Source of the DNA: Octopus sinensis
Lineage: Eukaryota
Direction of reading: 5' to 3'
Assembly (NCBI RefSeq): GCF_006345805.1
Contig: NW_021834613.1
Location: 1 to 47,201, forward strand
Length of the DNA: 47,201 nt
Positions 913 to 47,201 of the stretch are shown here, piece by piece; position 1 is the stretch's first letter, and each line of letters starts with the position of its first letter. A program made the translations under genes and the position numbers. The notes beneath the pieces were generated by a model that did not search any database, had not been told where the DNA came from, and saw nothing but the letters and a program-made list of their open reading frames with translations.

Positions 913-1409
913 ATGATTTTTACATACATGTAATACAGTCATGATTCTAATAATCTTTGTCCATCTGAGATTTTTACCATTGAGAGTGCACAATTTTTCA
1001 ACAAGTATTGAGTGCTATGACTCGATGGTTTTGTCTCTAAAACAAACCAGAAACTTTGCCCGCCAATGCACCACATACAGAAAATAAAAATGTTTCACAA
1101 AAGTGTGTTGTTTAAAGTTTAGATGTATCGGTGAGAATATCCTCTATCTGGTGTTGTTTGATTATAGATATTTACTCGATAAAGTATACAAACAATTATT
1201 CACGTCACAAACAGTTGTTTCATAACTGAAGCGGATATATCCTTACAAGACTGATGAAAAGTAACTGTATATACATATATGTGGTTGTATCTGTTTGCTT
1301 CTCTGTATGTTTGAACGTATGCATCATTTTCCAACCAAGACGAAAATAATTCTTGTATGAATTAACATCAAGTGTTTTTAGCGTTTAAATAGATCAGCGC
1401 TGAGATATG

Positions 1410-1587
1410 TTTTGGTCGATGCTTGGCTGAATGGTAAGAAGTTTTCTTGCAAACCACATACTTCCGGCTTCAGTCCCAATCCGTGGTAACTTGGACACTT
1501 AGGCAGCTTAGCACGCGTTTTATACAATAGCCTTGGGTCGATCAAAGATTTGTGAGTGAATTGGCAAAGGGAAACTGGAAGAAGCAC

Positions 1588-1590
<3 letters not shown>
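1410..1590 (+). mobile_element. Degenerate 5' half of SINE family A
   Basis: 'cagtcccaatccgtgg...atagccttgggtcgatcaaagatttgtgagtgaattggcaaagggaaactggaagaagc' aligns by eye to the family A copies at 3049 and 17297. Confidence 0.7.
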
Positions 1591-1627
<37 letters not shown>

Positions 1628-1823
1628 ATTCTCTAAACGAGATATAGACAGTAACTGCTCCATCACATAAGGGACATTAGCCATTTGAATGTGGCTAGGG
1701 ACAGGGCAGGGCGGTGGGGGTGTTACTGATGCATTTAGCCCCAGGCGATCATCAACGTCACCAGATAGGCTGACACCATCACGGTGTCCTCTATCCTGCA
1801 AAGGGAGATCATTCCCCGAAGAA

Positions 1824-1889
1824 GCGGATGCCACATACGGACCCAGGTTTCAAGGTATTTGCCTATCGTCAACGTATGGCAGGCACCGC
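1824..1889 (-). ncRNA. Type I hammerhead ribozyme motif, copy A
   Basis: Minus strand: GCGG-TGCC-TGC-CATACG TTGACGA TAGG-CAAATA-CCTT GAAA CCTGGG TC CGTATG-T-GGCA-T-CCGC; predicted GUC cleavage at the complement of 1840. Core deviates from consensus (C3U, U10.1-U11.1). Confidence 0.75.
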
Positions 1890-1949
1890 TCCTCGACGAA
1901 CAACTTCCCGTGCAGGATATTTATATATAGATTTTCACGTAAATACATA

Positions 1950-2016
1950 GCGGTTGCCTGCCATACGTTGACGATAGGCAAATACCTTGAAACCTGGGTC
2001 CGTATGTGGCATCCGC
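1950..2016 (+). ncRNA. Type I hammerhead ribozyme motif, copy B
   Basis: Stem I CATACG(1962-1967)/CGTATG(2001-2006); core TTGACGA 1968-1974; stem II AGG/CCT with loop CAAATA; GAAA 1989-1992; quasi-palindromic ACCTGGGT; GUC cleavage after C2000. Confidence 0.78.
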
Positions 2017-2305
2017 TTCTTCGGGGAATGATCTCCCTTTGCAGGATAGAGGACACCGTGATGGTGTCAGCCTATCTGGTGCGTTGATGATCGCCTGGGG
2101 CTAAATGCATCAGTACACAACCCACCGCTCTGCCCTGTCCCTAGCCACATTCAAAGGGCTAATGTCCCTATGTGATGGAGCAGTTACTGTCTATATCTCG
2201 TTTAGAGAATTATTATTGCTGTCGAACAGATTTTCGAAATCAGTAAATGTATTTACGTGAAAATCTATATATAAATATCCTGCACGGGAAGTTGTTCGTC
2301 GAGGA

Positions 2306-2371
2306 GCGGTGCCTGCCATACGTTGACGATAGGCAAATACCTTGAAACTTGGGTCCGTATGTGGCATCCGC
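2306..2371 (+). ncRNA. Type I hammerhead ribozyme motif, copy C
   Basis: Same architecture as copy B with stem III ACTTGGGT; predicted cleavage after C2355. Confidence 0.78.
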
Positions 2372-2661
2372 TTCTTCGGGGAATGATCTCCCTTTGCAGG
2401 ATAGAGGACACCGTGATGGTGTCAGCCTATCTGGTGACGTTGATGATCGCCTGGGGCTAAATGCATCAGTAACAACCCCACCGCTCTGCCCTGTCCCTAG
2501 CCACATTCAAAGGGCTAATGTCCCTTATGTGATGGAGCATTTACTGTCTATATCTCGTTTAGAGATTATTATTGCTGTCGAACAGATTTTCGAAATCAGT
2601 AATGTATTTACGTGAAAATCTATATATAAAATATCCTTCACGGGAAGTTGTTCGTCGAGGA

Positions 2662-2727
2662 GCGGTGCCTGCCATACGTTGACGATAGGCAAATAACCTT
2701 GAACTTGGGTCCGTATGTGGCATCCGC
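2662..2727 (+). ncRNA. Type I hammerhead ribozyme motif, copy D (indels: GAAC for GAAAC, extra A in loop II)
   Basis: Same stems; predicted cleavage after C2711. The single-base indels could be decay or sequencing error. Confidence 0.6.
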
Positions 2728-3048
2728 TTCTTCGGGGAATGATCTCCCTTTGCAGGATAGAGGACACCGTGATGGTGTCAGCCTATCTGGTGACGTTGAT
2801 GATCGCCTGGGGCTAATGCATCAGTAACCACCCCCCCGCCCTGCCCTGTCCCTAGCCACATTCAATGGCTAATGTCCCTTATGTGGTATATAATATATAT
2901 ATATATATATATATTATTTAATGTTTGGCCAGAATTGAAACAGTTGTAAGAGAATACGTTGGTTAGATTACTGCAGTTAATAAATAATATTGTTGCTACA
3001 TCTCCATTTTCTGAATTTTATTTTGTATATATATATATATATATATAT

Positions 3049-3419
3049 GCAGGAGTGGCTGTGTGGTAGGTAGCTTGTTTACCAACCACATGGTTTCGGG
3101 TTCAGTCCCACTGCGTGGCACCTTGGGCAAGTGTCTTCTACTATAGCCTCGGGCCGACCAAAGCCTTGTGAGTGGATTTGGTAGACGGAAACTGAAGGAA
3201 GCCCGTCGTATATATGTATATATATGCGTGTGTGTGTTTGTTCCCCTAGCATTGCTTGACAACCGATGCTGGTGTGTTTATGTCCCCGTTACTTAGCGGT
3301 TCGGCAAAAGAGACCGATAGAATATGTACTGGGCTTACAAAAGAATAAGTCCCGGGGTCGAGTTGCTTGATTAAAGGCAGTGCTCCAGCATGGCCGCAGT
3401 CAAATGACTGAAACAAGTA

Positions 3420-6775: not shown

Positions 6776-7220
6776 TTGTTATATCTAAAAAAAACAAATG
6801 TATGTTTTTCGTTTTGGGATTTGGTTTGCAAGATTCCTTATATGAGTTCGTGTGTTCAAGCATATTCTGTTGCGTCAGGAGAGAGTCATTTTCTCCTCAA
6901 ACCAGTGGCCTTTTTATTTGCTAGAAATCTTTACGTTTGATGAGAGTAATCTCTATTTCAAAATGTATGTTTGTAACTTAGTAAGTTTGTTATATCTAAA
7001 AAAAACAAATGTATGTTTTTCGTTTGGGATTGGTTTGCAAGATTCCTTATATGAGTTCGTGTGTTCAAGCATATTCTGTTGCGTCAGGAGAGAGTCATTT
7101 TCTCCTCAAACCAGTGGCCTTTTTATTTGCTAGAAATCTTTACGTTTGATGAGAGTAAATCTCTATTTCAAAATGTATGTTTGTAACTTAGTAAGTTTGT
7201 TATATCTAAAAAAAACAAAT
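6776..7220. repeat. Direct tandem repeat, unit about 210-211 bp (two full copies plus a stub)
   Basis: 'ttgttatatctaaaaaaaacaaat' at 6776, 6987 and 7197, with near-identical intervening sequence. Confidence 0.92.
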
Positions 7221-20943: not shown

Positions 20944-21495
20944 GGCAGCGTGCTGGCAGAAACGTTAGCACGCCGGGCGAAATGCGTGGCCGTATATCGT
21001 CTGCCTTTACGTTCTGAGTTCAAATTCCGCCGAGGTTGACTTTGCCTTTCATCTTTTCGGGGTCGATTAAATATGTACCAGTTACGCACTGGGGTTGATC
21101 TAATCGACTTAATCCGTTTGTCTGTCCTTGTTTGTCCTCTCTGTGTTTACCCCCTCGTGGGTAGTAAAGAAATAGGTATTTCGTCTATCGCTACGTTCTG
21201 AGTTCAAATTCCGGTGAGGTCGAATTTGCCTTTCATTCTTTTGGGGTCGATTAAATAAGTACCTGTTACGCACTGGGGTCGATGTAATCGACTTAATCCG
21301 TTTGTCTGTCCTTATTTGTCCTCTCTGTGTAGCCCCTTGTTGGTAGAAAAAGAAATAGGTATTTCGTTTGTTTTACGTGACGAGTTCAAATTCCGCCAAG
21401 ATCGATTTTGCCTTTCATCCTTTCGGGGTTGATAAATTAAGTACCTGTTGCGTAATCGACTGGACCCAACTCCCCAAAATTTTCGGGCCTTGTGC
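20944..21495 (+). mobile_element. SINE family C: one head and three tandem bodies (period about 183-184 bp)
   Basis: Body starts at 20992, 21176 and 21359; junction 'aaagaaatag|gtatttcgt'. Confidence 0.9.
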
Positions 21496-22283: not shown

Positions 22284-22697
22284 GGCGGCGAGCTGGTAGA
22301 AACGTTAGCACGCCGGGAGAGATTCGTAGCCGTATTTCGTCTGTCGTTACGTTCCGAGTTCAAATTCCGCCGAGGTCGACTTTGCCTTTCAAACTTTCGG
22401 AATCGATAAATTAAGTACCAGTTACGCACTGGGGTCGATGTAGTCGACTTAATCCCTTTGTCTGTCCTTGTTTGTCCCCTCTGTGTTTAGCTCCTGGTGG
22501 GTAGTAAAGAAATAGGTATTTCGTCTGTCGTTACGTTCCGAGTTCAAATTCCGCCGGGGTCGACTTTGCCCTTCGTCCTTTCGGGGTCGATAAATTAAGT
22601 ACCAGTTACGCACTGGGGTCGATGTAGTCGACTTAATCCCTTTCTCTGTCCTTGTTTGTCCCCTCTGTGTTTAGCCCCTTGTGGGTAGTAAAGAAAT
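22284..22697 (+). mobile_element. SINE family C: head and two tandem bodies
   Basis: Second body starts at 22516 after the same 'aaagaaatag|gtatttcgtc' junction. Confidence 0.9.
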
Positions 22698-23204
22698 ATA
22701 TATATATATATATTGAGCATTGGCATCGAGGTAATCCTCCGTTTTCTCAAAACTTATAGACTCGTGCCAAAATGTGAAAGAATCACTTTCAGTAGAATTA
22801 GTTTTTCTATTGTTATTGTACGAGAGCTTGAGCCCTTCGTGGTTCGGATAAACCTGAATATATTGGTTTTTTTCTTAACTGGTTCTATTTGGAATCTCTT
22901 GTGTATCAGGACTGCATCATCTCAGTATCCACAAATTTTGTATATTACATATATATTTTTTTCTCATCTCAATATTCTCTTCGTCTCTTTCCACATCTGT
23001 TTATGCAAAGCACAAAAAAGATTGCAGGCTGTCCTTGTAATGTCTCCCTGATTGATATCCCTCGGTCAGATAAAGAAATTATTATTACTATCTTCTCTTT
23101 ATCGCAGGTTTTATTGGAGTTCCTGGAGTTATTCAATTTCATTGATTGAATATCTTCAATTATGCGTTCGAGAATATGTTTGACTACTAGGATTTACGTT
23201 TTCA

Positions 23205-24374: not shown

Positions 24375-24846
24375 GGGAAATGGAAGCACTCCGTCGGTTA
24401 CGACGACGAGGTTTCCGGTTGATCACAATCAACGGAACAGCCTGCTCGTGAAATTAACGTGTAAGTGGCTGAGCACTCCACAGACACGTGTACCCTTAAC
24501 GCAGTTCTCGGGGATATTCAGCGTGACACAGAGAGTGACAAGGCCGGCCCTTTGAAATACAGGTACAACAGAAAGAGGAAGTAAGAGTGAGAGAAAGTTG
24601 TGGTGAAAGAGTACAGCAAGGATCACCACCATCCCCTGCCGGAGCATCGTGGAGCTTTTATGTGTTTTCGCTCAATAAACACTCACAACGCCCGGTCTGG
24701 GAATCGAAACCATCCCTGCCGGAGCATCGTGGAGCTTTAAGGTGTTTTCGCTCAATAAACACTCACAACGCCCGGTCTGGGAATCGAAACCGCGATCCTA
24801 CGACCGCGAGTCCGCTGCCCTAACCACTGGGCCATTGCGCCTCCAC
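24375..24846 (-). mobile_element. SINE family B with an internal tandem duplication of about 80 bp and an 11-bp target-site duplication
   Basis: 'tacgcatatat' at 24364-24374 and 24847-24857; 24631-24710 is repeated at 24711-24789. Confidence 0.92.
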
Positions 24847-46444: not shown

Positions 46445-46835
46445 TAGCAGTATCGCCCGGCGTTGCTCGGGTTTGTAAGGGAATAACTATATAAGCATTT
46501 TTAGAGAGTTATAGCCCAAAAATAGCAAAAAAAATGCATTAAAAATGGAAAAAAATTATGGTAATTTTTTTTAAATCGTTGACTCATCGTAGACATTTTT
46601 AGAGAGTTACTTCCCTTATATAATAGCGAAAAAAATGGATTAAAATGGAAAAAAATTTTGGTAAATTATTTTTAAAATCGTAGACTCATCGTAGACGCGG
46701 GCTAATACCCAGAAGGGCTCGATATCAATCACGACTATAAGATACCCGGTTCTGGTTAAACTGCACCGCAAAATGTGGGAGTAGTTACGAATCTAAATCG
46801 TAGGAGACAGACACACAACTTCACTTTTATATATA
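46444..46835 (-). mobile_element. Non-autonomous Helitron, same family as 26465-26763, with an internal duplication of about 105 bp
   Basis: CTAG at 46444-46447 with the hairpin 'cccggcgttgctcggg'; the 5' end merges into (TA)n. Confidence 0.87.
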
Positions 46836-47013
46836 TATATACATGTGCGAGCTCGCGCAATGTTTGTGTGTGTGTGTGCGTACTTCGGTAAAATAAATGA
46901 TTGGAAATAGTTTTAGTGTCACGGAGGGATTAATTAGTGGTTTTGTAAGACAAATGAATTGCATCTAATATTAGATGGAGCACGAAACGGAACGAAAGAG
47001 ATGAATAACGATT

Positions 47014-47201
47014 GAAAGAAAGATTTAAGAATGAAAACGCAGAAGAAAAAAAAATTAACGAAATTGATTAAAAAAATATCAACCACAGTAGAAACGAATG
47101 AAAGAAATATTTAAGAATGAAAATACAGAAGAAAAAAAAATGAACGAAATTGATTAAAAAAATATCAACCACAGTAGAAACGAATGAAAGAAATATTTAA
47201 G
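47014..47201. repeat. 86-bp direct tandem repeat running off the window end
   Basis: 'gaaagaaa(g/t)atttaag' at 47014, 47100 and 47186. Confidence 0.85.

What the first reader, a model, noticed from the sequence alone, without database searches (positions are those of the whole stretch)
1622..2885. Candidate cephalopod retrozyme: tandem 355-356 nt units, each with a Sm-alpha-like type I hammerhead
Seen: a GC-rich non-coding unit repeats head-to-tail, and every unit has the HHR layout. Stem I is CATACG/CGTATG (6 bp), then a UGC/U internal loop, then TGCC/GGCA and GCGG/CCGC. The rest is core UUGACGA, stem II with loop CAAAUA, GAAA, a short quasi-palindromic stem III and a GUC site. Predicted cuts after 2000, 2355 and 2711 would release monomers of 355 and 356 nt. 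The unit has other local hairpins (gacacc/ggtgtc, ggga/tccc, tagcc/ggcta) and an 8-bp long-range complement (caccgctc 2479-2486 with gagcggtg 2660-2667). Established: the Schistosoma mansoni Sm-alpha HHR has a 6-bp stem I, a 3/1-nt internal loop and loop II CAAAUA (from memory). Non-LTR retrozymes in corals, mussels and amphibians are tandem HHR units of a few hundred nt that yield circular RNAs. Inference: this is a non-autonomous ribozyme retroelement making a circRNA of about 356 nt, probably mobilised by a Penelope-like RT. I do not know of one described in octopus but cannot check the literature.
Basis: partly seen in the sequence, partly recalled or inferred. Interest (0 to 1): 0.92.

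Follow-up and report, generated by a model that had tools for sequence, protein, structure and literature searches.

The report
Octopus-type retrozyme with variant hammerhead
This is one insertion of a small non-coding mobile repeat carrying a hammerhead self-cleaving RNA motif with an unusual core base, apparently copied into a (TA)n microsatellite by Penelope-like retrotransposon machinery; it is a good new example of a known kind of element, and neither its ribozyme activity nor any circular RNA has been shown.

Summary
The repeat is real, but it is not simply head-to-tail. Window 1622-1948 is an inverted 0.92-unit arm. Window 1949-2885 holds 2.63 direct units of 355/356 nt. The whole insertion sits in a (TA)n tract.

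The hammerhead layout is far beyond chance, and compensatory changes preserve it across diverged sister families. Its core is not canonical, however. Position 3 is U in the whole family, giving a U3·G8 wobble here and U3-A8 in twice as many relatives. The pair closing stem II is U·U here. No Rfam model matches. The third direct copy has a broken GAAA box.

The family is dispersed. In 37 loci examined:
- 24 are head-to-head double arms with their 3' ends facing outward.
- Arm 3' ends fall at two fixed unit positions, about 178 and about 221.
- In 20 of 20 scorable double-armed insertions there is one end of each kind.
- Most flanks are (TA)n.

This is the tandem/inverted, "tail" and microsatellite signature published for Penelope-like elements. 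Intact PLEs with their own U3-A8 hammerhead exist in the genome.

Transcription, self-cleavage and circular RNA remain unshown. The scan has already reported sister retrozyme families on other DNA of this genome. Verdict: new member of a known kind, moderate interest.

The parts
1589..1621 (.). (TA)n target tract, left flank. It is the TA tail of a SINE-like repeat lying at about 1400-1588.
   Evidence: TRF gives (TA)18 at 1589-1624. The flank was read.
1622..1948 (-). Inverted arm of 0.92 unit. Read on the minus strand it runs from unit position 247 through 356/1 to about 217. Its 3' end (the long, 'tail'-bearing end) faces outward at 1622.
   Evidence: Inverted repeat I1 is 319 nt and 98% complementary.
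1622..1661 (-). The 'tail': unit positions about 179-217, present only on this arm's outer end.
   Evidence: Arm 3' ends cluster at unit 171-178 or 217-221. In 20 of 20 two-armed insertions there is one of each. The tail concept is from PMC8557442 and PMC11167929.
1834..1878 (-). Hammerhead-like motif of the inverted arm (U3·G8 core). The predicted cut lies between 1840 and 1839 on the minus strand.
   Evidence: Descriptor hit.
1949..2885 (+). Direct arm of 2.63 units: unit 306-356, two full units (2001-2355 and 2356-2711), then unit 1-176. Its 3' end (the short end) faces outward at 2885.
   Evidence: TRF. BLAST segmentation.
1962..2006 (+). Hammerhead-like motif, copy 1. The stem III octamer is ACCUGGGU. 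The predicted cut is after 2000.
   Evidence: Descriptor hit.
2300..2378 (+). Extended hammerhead domain of copy 2. Stem I has three segments (6 + 4 + 6-7 bp). The core is UUGACGA, stem II is UAGG/CCUU with loop CAAAUA, then GAAA, stem III and GUC. The predicted cut is after 2355.
   Evidence: Structure counted on alignment A1: 96.6% of cells paired against 29-55% when the partner is slid, and 5 pairs changed on both sides. RNAalifold recovers stems I and II.
2673..2716 (+). Degenerate third motif: loop II is CAAAUAA and GAAA has become GAAC. It is predicted to be inactive.
   Evidence: Sequence. It is not accepted by the descriptor.
2886..2916 (.). (TA)n target tract, right flank.
   Evidence: Sequence and flank listing.

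Best explanation
Window 1622-2885 is one insertion of a young, non-coding, non-autonomous retroelement of the animal 'non-LTR retrozyme' kind.

Shown:
- The 356-nt unit is dispersed through the 2.7-Gb genome.
- Each insertion lies in a (TA)n tract and usually consists of two head-to-head arms of 0.1-5 tandem units whose 3' ends face outward.
- One arm ends at unit position about 178 and the other at about 221.
- The unit carries a type I hammerhead domain of Sm1-like architecture whose helices are kept by compensatory changes across diverged sister families. Its core has U at position 3, paired with G8 (this subfamily) or A8 (most relatives).

Inferred:
- Source copies are transcribed as multimers.
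- The hammerheads of neighbouring units pair through their self-complementary stem III and cut after GUC, probably slowly in this subfamily.
- Unit-length RNA may be ligated into a circle.
- The RT/GIY-YIG protein of a Penelope-like element nicks both strands of a (TA)n tract. It starts reverse transcription at two internal sites of the RNA, one per DNA end, and runs round or along the repeated template. The two cDNAs are then joined head to head.

The copies at this locus are passive products. One motif is broken and the other three have a weakened core.
For: Dispersal and ends:
- At least 1749 first-look candidates and 160 scored matches across many contigs.
- In 37 loci, 24 are two-armed, and all 24 have their 3' ends outward.
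- Arm 3' ends fall 30 times at unit 171-178 and 27 times at 217-221.
- There is one of each in 20 of 20 scorable pairs.
- Flanks are (TA)n-rich in 27 of 37 loci on each side.
- Both arms of an insertion are as alike as units within an arm (98.3% and 98.5%), against 96% between loci.

Published PLE hallmarks that match:
- Tandem/inverted copies, a 30-40-bp tail at one end and (TA)n targets (PMC8557442).
- Two adjacent internal RT start sites whose interval is the tail (PMC11167929).

PLEs in this genome:
- At least 5029 GIY-YIG candidates, with open frames up to 883 aa.
- One family is confirmed as RVT_1 plus a C-terminal GIY-YIG domain.
- That family carries its own U3-A8 minimal hammerhead about 60 nt before a 3' end that abuts (TA)n.

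The hammerhead is real:
- 0 descriptor hits in 20 Mb of random sequence.
- 96.6% of cells paired, with 5 pairs changed on both sides.
- The 26-nt core is identical between families that are otherwise 72-75% alike.
- Position 8 toggles between G (155 exact matches) and A (314), while U3 stays fixed (C3 occurs only twice).
- The stem III octamers of the sister families are ACUGCAGU, ACCUAGGU and ACUAUAGU, all perfect palindromes. The window's family has ACCUGGGU.
- The loops match Sm1/N79.
- The same variants appear in contigs of runs labelled as other organisms.

Whole-unit fold: circular minimum free energy is -111 kcal/mol with z = -3.4, and stem I extends to about 35 bp.
Against: - No Rfam hammerhead model matches, even at E <= 10 on 101 nt.
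- C3 is replaced by U and the G10.1-C11.1 pair by U·U in this subfamily. Together these are expected to lower the cleavage rate. That expectation rests on my own knowledge of hammerhead biochemistry and was not tested here.
- No RNA-labelled run holds the element. The contigs that span the cleavage site come from runs whose RNA status is a guess.
- Insertion ends are not at the ribozyme cut site.
- For a Poseidon PLE, hammerhead catalysis was dispensable for insertion in vitro (PMC11167929).
- No sequence similarity was found between the unit and 30 sampled PLE loci, so the partner is not identified.
- The covariation rests on few independent lineages.
Confidence: 0.78

Rival explanations
1. 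It is the same PLE-mobilised element, but the hammerhead-like domain no longer acts as a ribozyme in this family. The conserved structure serves another purpose, such as RNP recognition or RNA stability. The template is then an uncut linear multimeric transcript, and no circular RNA is involved.
For: - U3·G8 and a U·U or G·U closing pair in the youngest subfamilies, and no Rfam match.
- Insertion ends lie at unit positions about 178 and 221, not at the cut site.
- In vitro, catalytic hammerhead mutants of a Poseidon PLE still insert, and no RNA-seq reads ended at its cut site (PMC11167929).
- Naiad PLEs thrive without canonical hammerheads (PMC8557442).
Against: - Every catalytic-core position other than 3, 7 and 8 is invariant across the diverged families.
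- Position 8 varies only between the two purines that pair with U3.
- Stem III stays self-complementary through three different sequences. That is a requirement specific to the dimeric active fold.
- The U3-A8 core is a documented natural covariation (PMC3088659, PMC4209133).
Confidence: 0.3
2. The block is not an independent element. It is an array of pseudo-LTRs left by an autonomous Penelope-like element whose coding part was lost or truncated.
For: PLE insertions are often 5'-truncated partial tandems with inverted copies (PMC8557442). In Xenopus, retrozymes resemble PLE pLTRs (preprint 10.64898/2026.07.22.740005).
Against: None of the 37 loci has RT/EN sequence between or beside the arms, and arms contain only the 356-nt unit. 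The unit has no similarity to 30 sampled PLE loci or to 10 canonical-hammerhead loci. Only 30 of at least 5029 PLE candidates were sampled.
Confidence: 0.07
3. It is ordinary satellite or segmentally duplicated DNA, and the hammerhead-like motif is a chance match.
For: It is tandem, non-coding and flanked by simple repeats. No Rfam model matches.
Against: - It is dispersed at many unlinked loci with fixed ends and variable inner junctions.
- The relaxed descriptor gave 0 hits in 20 Mb of random sequence.
- Compensatory changes are seen in three helices.
Confidence: 0.02

Closest known systems
Metazoan non-LTR retrozymes (Cervera & de la Pena 2020, PMC7229834: coral, mussel, axolotl)
   Same: Both are short tandem repeats of a few hundred nt, non-coding, dispersed, and carry one type I hammerhead per unit with a short palindromic stem III suited to dimeric cleavage. 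A PLE has been proposed as the mobiliser.
   Different: - This one comes from a cephalopod-type genome. No paper in the held library describes one there.
- The core has U3 with G8 or A8 in place of C3-G8.
- The insertion anatomy is resolved here: (TA)n target, head-to-head arms, one short and one long end.
- Circular RNA, the feature shown experimentally for the published cases, is not shown here.
Schistosoma mansoni Sm-alpha / Sm1 hammerhead (sequence of its N79 derivative in PMC12550524)
   Same: Both have a 6-bp helix I followed by a 3-nt/1-nt internal loop. That loop is UAC/U in Sm1 and in most relatives here, and UGC/U in the window. Both also have a 4-bp helix II capped by CAAAUA.
   Different: - Sm1 has the canonical CUGAUGA core and a G-C closing pair. 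The window has UUGACGA and U·U.
- Stem I here continues into a helix of about 35 bp.
- The unit sequences are unrelated.
U3-A8 hammerheads of Penelope-like elements (Cercyon of Schistosoma, PMC4209133) and other natural U3-A8 variants (PMC3088659)
   Same: The 3-8 base pair is kept by covariation. U3-A8 is the commonest state of this superfamily (314 exact matches), and it is also the state of the hammerhead in an intact PLE family of this genome.
   Different: The window's subfamily has the U3·G8 wobble intermediate as a family-wide state (155 matches). The architecture is the long 'canonical metazoan' one, not the minimal PLE one.
Penelope-like element insertion signature (Craig et al. 2021, PMC8557442; Frangieh et al. 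2024, PMC11167929)
   Same: Partial tandems, an adjacent inverted 5'-truncated copy, an extension ('tail') at one end only, (TA)n or AT-rich targets, and two internal RT start sites.
   Different: - There is no ORF.
- The tail is 43-45 nt rather than 30-40 bp.
- The pairing of one short with one long end is strict in the sample (20 of 20).
- No sequence is shared with the sampled autonomous PLEs.
Plant LTR retrozymes (PMC4918200)
   Same: Both are non-autonomous retroelements with hammerheads, proposed to move through circular RNA.
   Different: The plant elements have type III hammerheads inside LTRs, carry a PBS and PPT, and are mobilised by Ty3/gypsy machinery. None of these features is present here.

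Membership tests
Hammerhead ribozyme, type I (Rfam RF00163) | Three helices around a junction, with helix I open and helices II and III closed | tested here: met
   Descriptor hits at 1834-1878(-), 1962-2006(+) and 2317-2361(+). On 24 sequences, 96.6% of cells are paired.
Hammerhead ribozyme, type I (Rfam RF00163) | Invariant core U4 G5 A6 / A9 / G12 A13 A14 / A15.1-U16.1 / H17 | tested here: met
   Present in three of the four window copies and invariant in alignment A1. The fourth copy (2673-2716) has GAAC in place of GAAA.
Hammerhead ribozyme, type I (Rfam RF00163) | C3-G8 Watson-Crick pair in the core | tested here: not met
   All window copies have U3 with G8, a wobble pair. Genome-wide counts are C3-G8 2, U3·G8 155 and U3-A8 314. 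Pairing is kept, and U3-A8 is a published natural covariant.
Hammerhead ribozyme, type I (Rfam RF00163) | Score at or above the Rfam gathering threshold | tested here: not met
   No hammerhead hit at the gathering threshold, nor at E <= 10 on 1401 nt or on 101 nt. Canonical hammerheads elsewhere in the genome score up to 48 bits.
Hammerhead ribozyme, type I (Rfam RF00163) | Helices supported by covariation | tested here: met
   Five pairs are changed on both sides, in helix I (4 pairs) and helix III (1 pair). Three different perfectly palindromic stem III octamers occur in the sister families. The number of independent lineages is small.
Hammerhead ribozyme, type I (Rfam RF00163) | Site-specific self-cleavage | not testable with these tools
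   This needs in vitro transcription of dimeric constructs.
Non-LTR retrozyme | Dispersed short tandem repeats, non-coding, each unit with a type I hammerhead | tested here: met
Non-LTR retrozyme | Expressed as unit-length linear and circular RNA | tested here: inconclusive
   No holder is on record as RNA. Contigs of 285-290 nt from runs guessed to be RNA span the motif, but they could be DNA.
Non-autonomous element mobilised by Penelope-like elements | Tandem plus inverted 5'-truncated arrangement | tested here: met
   24 of 37 loci are two-armed, always with 3' ends outward and with variable inner junctions.
Non-autonomous element mobilised by Penelope-like elements | 'Tail' extension at one end, i.e. 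two RT start sites | tested here: met
   Arm 3' ends fall at unit 171-178 (30 times) or 217-221 (27 times). There is one of each in 20 of 20 scorable pairs.
Non-autonomous element mobilised by Penelope-like elements | Microsatellite, (TA)n, target bias | tested here: met
   Flanks are (TA)n-rich in 27 of 37 loci on each side. The window is flanked by (TA)n at 1589-1621 and from 2886.
Non-autonomous element mobilised by Penelope-like elements | Autonomous PLE present in the same genome | tested here: met
   At least 5029 GIY-YIG candidates, with frames up to 883 aa. RVT_1 plus GIY-YIG was confirmed on L048.
Non-autonomous element mobilised by Penelope-like elements | Sequence similarity to the 3' end or pLTR of an autonomous PLE | tested here: inconclusive
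   No similarity to 30 sampled PLE loci beyond TA repeats.

The most novel reading that the evidence does not exclude
Two linked readings remain open.

1. The U3·G8 wobble core, fixed in a subfamily that kept spreading, may be a naturally attenuated or protein-dependent hammerhead that is selected for, rather than a decaying one.

2. The strict rule of one short end plus one long end per insertion (20 of 20) may be the genomic footprint of a PLE dimer. In that model each DNA strand is primed from a different one of the two RT start sites, in a coupled manner. This detail is not stated in the PLE papers read here. The in vitro study saw no strand difference in start site (PMC11167929).
Probability: 0.25. 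Interest if true: 0.6.

Novelty: new member of a known kind. Interest (0 to 1): 0.4.

Why it matters
Retrozymes and their dependence on Penelope-like elements are recent and still thinly documented. The PLE link rests mostly on co-occurrence and pLTR similarity in vertebrates. This family adds three things.

- It extends the class to a cephalopod-type genome, where no paper in the held library reports one.
- It gives unusually clean insertion footprints that tie a hammerhead repeat to PLE-type integration: (TA)n targets, head-to-head arms, and two fixed ends always used as a pair.
- It offers a natural series at core positions 3 and 8, U3-A8 and U3·G8, inside one architecture. That series allows a direct test of how far the core pair can be weakened before an element stops spreading.

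It does not reveal a new kind of ribozyme or element.

Tried and rejected
- **Rfam.** I searched at the gathering threshold on the whole window, then at E <= 10 on 1401 nt and on 101 nt. There was no hammerhead hit. The sub-threshold mir-455 and mir-3688 hits at 1842-1997 are artefacts of the inverted-repeat junction.
- **Autonomous partner by similarity.** BLAST of the unit against 30 GIY-YIG loci and 10 canonical-hammerhead loci gave only TA-repeat matches.
- **More copies.** I did not try to read flanks through patterns.
- **RNA evidence.** No run on record as RNA was listed, neither in the first search nor with the library word RNA-Seq. The single read-laying run used Logan contigs only, which cannot show RNA ends or circles.
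- **Activity of a U3·G8 core.** The paper on C3-G8 exchanges (PMC1986816) is not held.
- **Coding potential and tRNAs.** The only ORF of at least 120 aa in the block (1689-2087) runs across the inverted junction. No ORF is kept from unit to unit, and no tRNA was found.
- **Snap-back origin of the inverted arm.** Rejected, because the two arms meet at different unit positions (247 against 306).
Full report
**1. What is in the window**

Tandem Repeats Finder reports a 356-nt period over 1949-2885, with 2.6 copies and 96% matches. Arms 1630-1948 and 2247-2565 are 98% complementary over 319 nt.

BLAST segmentation gives two arms, counting unit position 1 as the base after the predicted cut (window 2356):
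- A minus-strand arm that runs from unit position 247 through 356/1 to about 217.
- A plus-strand arm directly beside it that runs from unit 306 through two full units to unit 176.

The two arms therefore meet at their 5' ends and their 3' ends face outward. Both outer ends abut (TA)n, at 1589-1621 and from 2886. The unit is non-coding and has G+C of 0.46.

**2. The hammerhead-like motif**

- CAUACG / UUGACGA / UAGG-CAAAUA-CCUU / GAAA / C(C/U)UGG / GUC / CGUAUG.
- The stem I continuation is UGC/U, then UGCC/GGCA, then GCGG/CCGC.

I wrote a descriptor relaxed just enough to accept this motif: Y at position 3, one non-pair allowed in stem II, and stem I of at least 5 bp. It finds the motif at 1834-1878(-), 1962-2006(+) and 2317-2361(+), nowhere else in the window, and 0 times in 20 Mb of composition-matched random sequence.

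The third direct copy (2673-2716) has CAAAUAA and GAAC and fails the descriptor.

The motif deviates from the hammerhead consensus at C3, which is U here, and at the G10.1-C11.1 closing pair, which is U·U here. No Rfam family matches at the gathering threshold, or at E <= 10 on 1401 nt or 101 nt. The same genome holds canonical type I hammerheads scoring up to 48 bits.

**3. It is a dispersed family with fixed ends**

The unit has at least 1749 first-look candidates and 160 scored matches on many contigs of the 2.72-Gb assembly. I examined 37 independent loci of this family:
- 24 are two-armed, and all 24 have the 3' ends outward.
- The inner junctions are at variable unit positions, as expected for 5' truncation.
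- Of 61 arm 3' ends, 30 lie at unit 171-178 and 27 at 217-221.
- In all 20 two-armed insertions with both ends scorable, one end is short and the other long, never two of a kind.
- Flanks are (TA)n-rich in 27 of 37 loci on each side.
- Units of one insertion are 98.5% (same arm) and 98.3% (opposite arms) alike, against 96% between loci. This fits one event and one template pool per insertion.

**4. Comparison with published PLE biology**

Craig et al. (PMC8557442) describe PLE insertions as 5'-truncated partial tandems. These often have an adjacent inverted truncated copy and a 30-40-bp 'tail' at one end only. Naiad and Neptune elements show a bias for (TA)n.

Frangieh et al. (PMC11167929) showed in vitro that a Poseidon RT starts at two adjacent internal sites of its RNA. 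The sequence between the two sites is the tail. They also found that hammerhead catalysis is not needed for insertion.

The 43-45-nt interval between the two end classes here fits that tail. The strict pairing of one short with one long end is sharper than what those papers state.

The genome holds at least 5029 GIY-YIG candidates with open frames up to 883 aa. One family is confirmed as RVT_1 plus a C-terminal GIY-YIG domain. It has its own minimal hammerhead with a UUGAUAA (U3-A8) core about 60 nt before a 3' end that abuts (TA)n. It is a plausible partner, but it shares no sequence with the unit.

**5. Is the hammerhead domain under selection?**

Pattern counts in the genome show that U3 is the family state:

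| Core state | Pattern | Exact matches |
|---|---|---|
| C3-G8 | CTGAYGA... | 2 |
| U3·G8 | TTGAYGA... | 155 |
| U3-A8 | TTGAYAA... | 314 |

Both arms of an insertion share the same state, so the state was already in the template.

A sister family only 72-75% identical elsewhere keeps the 26-nt core stretch unchanged and changes stem I in a compensated way:
- The middle stem I segment is GUGCC/GGCAU, against GUGAU/AUCAC and GUGCU/AGUAC.
- The distal stem I segment is CGAGGAG/UUCUUCG, against CGAAAAU/GUUUUCG and CGAAGAC/GUCUUCG.

I counted the named structure on a 24-sequence alignment. It has 96.6% of cells paired, against 29-55% when the partner is slid by 1-3 columns, and five pairs are changed on both sides. 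RNAalifold independently recovers stems I and II.

The stem III octamer is ACCUGGGU here. In relatives it is ACCUAGGU, ACUAUAGU or ACUGCAGU, all perfect palindromes. This is the requirement for the dimeric active fold described for metazoan type I hammerheads (PMC4209133).

The internal loop (UAC/U in most relatives) and loop II (CAAAUA) equal those of the Sm1-derived N79 ribozyme (PMC12550524).

U3-A8 is a documented natural covariation (PMC3088659, PMC4209133). The window's U3·G8 is its wobble neighbour.

Contigs of runs labelled as two other organisms show the same alternatives: 2327 C>T together with 2328 G>A, 2330 T>G, and 2351 G>A.

The number of independent lineages behind the covariation is small, and this limits its weight.

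**6. What is not shown**

No run on record as RNA holds the element. Contigs of 285-290 nt from runs only guessed to be RNA span the motif and the cut site. Contigs cannot show ends or circles, and the runs may be DNA.

Self-cleavage cannot be tested here. From general hammerhead biochemistry (my own knowledge), U3·G8 together with a U·U closing pair should weaken catalysis. The youngest subfamilies are the most deviant at stem II: G-C in older copies, then G·U, then U·U. Part of this trend follows from decay of the C11.1-G12 CpG.

The circular fold of the unit is stable (-111 kcal/mol, z = -3.4), with stem I extended to about 35 bp. This resembles other retrozyme RNAs but proves nothing about circles.

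**7. Verdict**

The block is one insertion of a non-autonomous, PLE-type-inserted retrozyme family with a genuine but variant hammerhead domain. Activity and circular RNA are open.

The class and its PLE link are published (PMC7229834; preprint 10.64898/2026.07.22.740005). Cephalopod examples are not in the held literature. The scan has already reported sister families in this genome, including 349-, 363- and about 490-nt units and U3-A8 cores. This is a new member of a known kind.

Noticed in passing
window 1400-1588 and 3050-3215; also L007 and L019 left flanks: Copies of a SINE-like repeat (...GGAAACTGRARGAAGCMCGT...) end in a (TA)n tail. In the window, and at two other loci, the retrozyme insertion sits in exactly that tail. 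This abundant SINE may therefore supply landing sites for (TA)n-targeting elements.
   Followed up: partly
L048:2358-2402, L057:2361-2405, L063:2359-2403, L061:2206-2253, L062 (minus strand): A PLE family with long open RT + GIY-YIG frames carries a minimal hammerhead with a UUGAUAA (U3-A8) core, a CAUG palindrome in place of stem III and a UA cut site. The motif lies about 60 nt before a 3' end that abuts (TA)n.
   Followed up: partly
G000 C16:25146363-25146408 and C16:25146794-25146839 (L036/L037); C13:29988995 (L031) and others: Canonical C3 type I hammerheads (GUAC CUGAAGA G ACCC...GGGU C GAAAC AUGU GUC GUAC) score 34-48 bits with RF00163. Two of them lie 431 nt apart on one strand, which suggests another tandem hammerhead repeat family.
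   Followed up: no
window 2409-2555 and 2169-2264 (unit positions about 55-200): In contigs of two large runs whose type is not on record, this part of the unit is 10-40 times deeper than the hammerhead part. This suggests that the 3' module is shared with far more abundant repeats, either other non-autonomous families or the partner element.
   Followed up: no
L023:1399-1545: One copy has the 27-nt hammerhead core stretch (GTTGACGAGAGGCAAACACCTTGAAAC) duplicated in tandem. This may be a template slip during reverse transcription.
   Followed up: no
G000 C11:36258488 (L071, plus arm) against C11:36258185 (minus arm): This is one of only two exact C3 (canonical CUGACGA) copies in the genome. 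Its partner arm in the same insertion has U3, so the C is a change private to that arm and not a family state.
   Followed up: partly
window 6776-7220, 21008-21449, 22332-22698, 24628-24791, 46496-46696, 47007-47201: Other tandem repeats are present, with periods of 209, 184, 184, 80, 102 and 86 nt. The 184-nt units resemble the SINE-like repeat. None was examined.
   Followed up: no
window 1842-1997: Sub-threshold Rfam microRNA hits (mir-455 at 36 bits, mir-3688) arise only because the junction of the two inverted arms forms a long hairpin. They are artefacts.
   Followed up: yes
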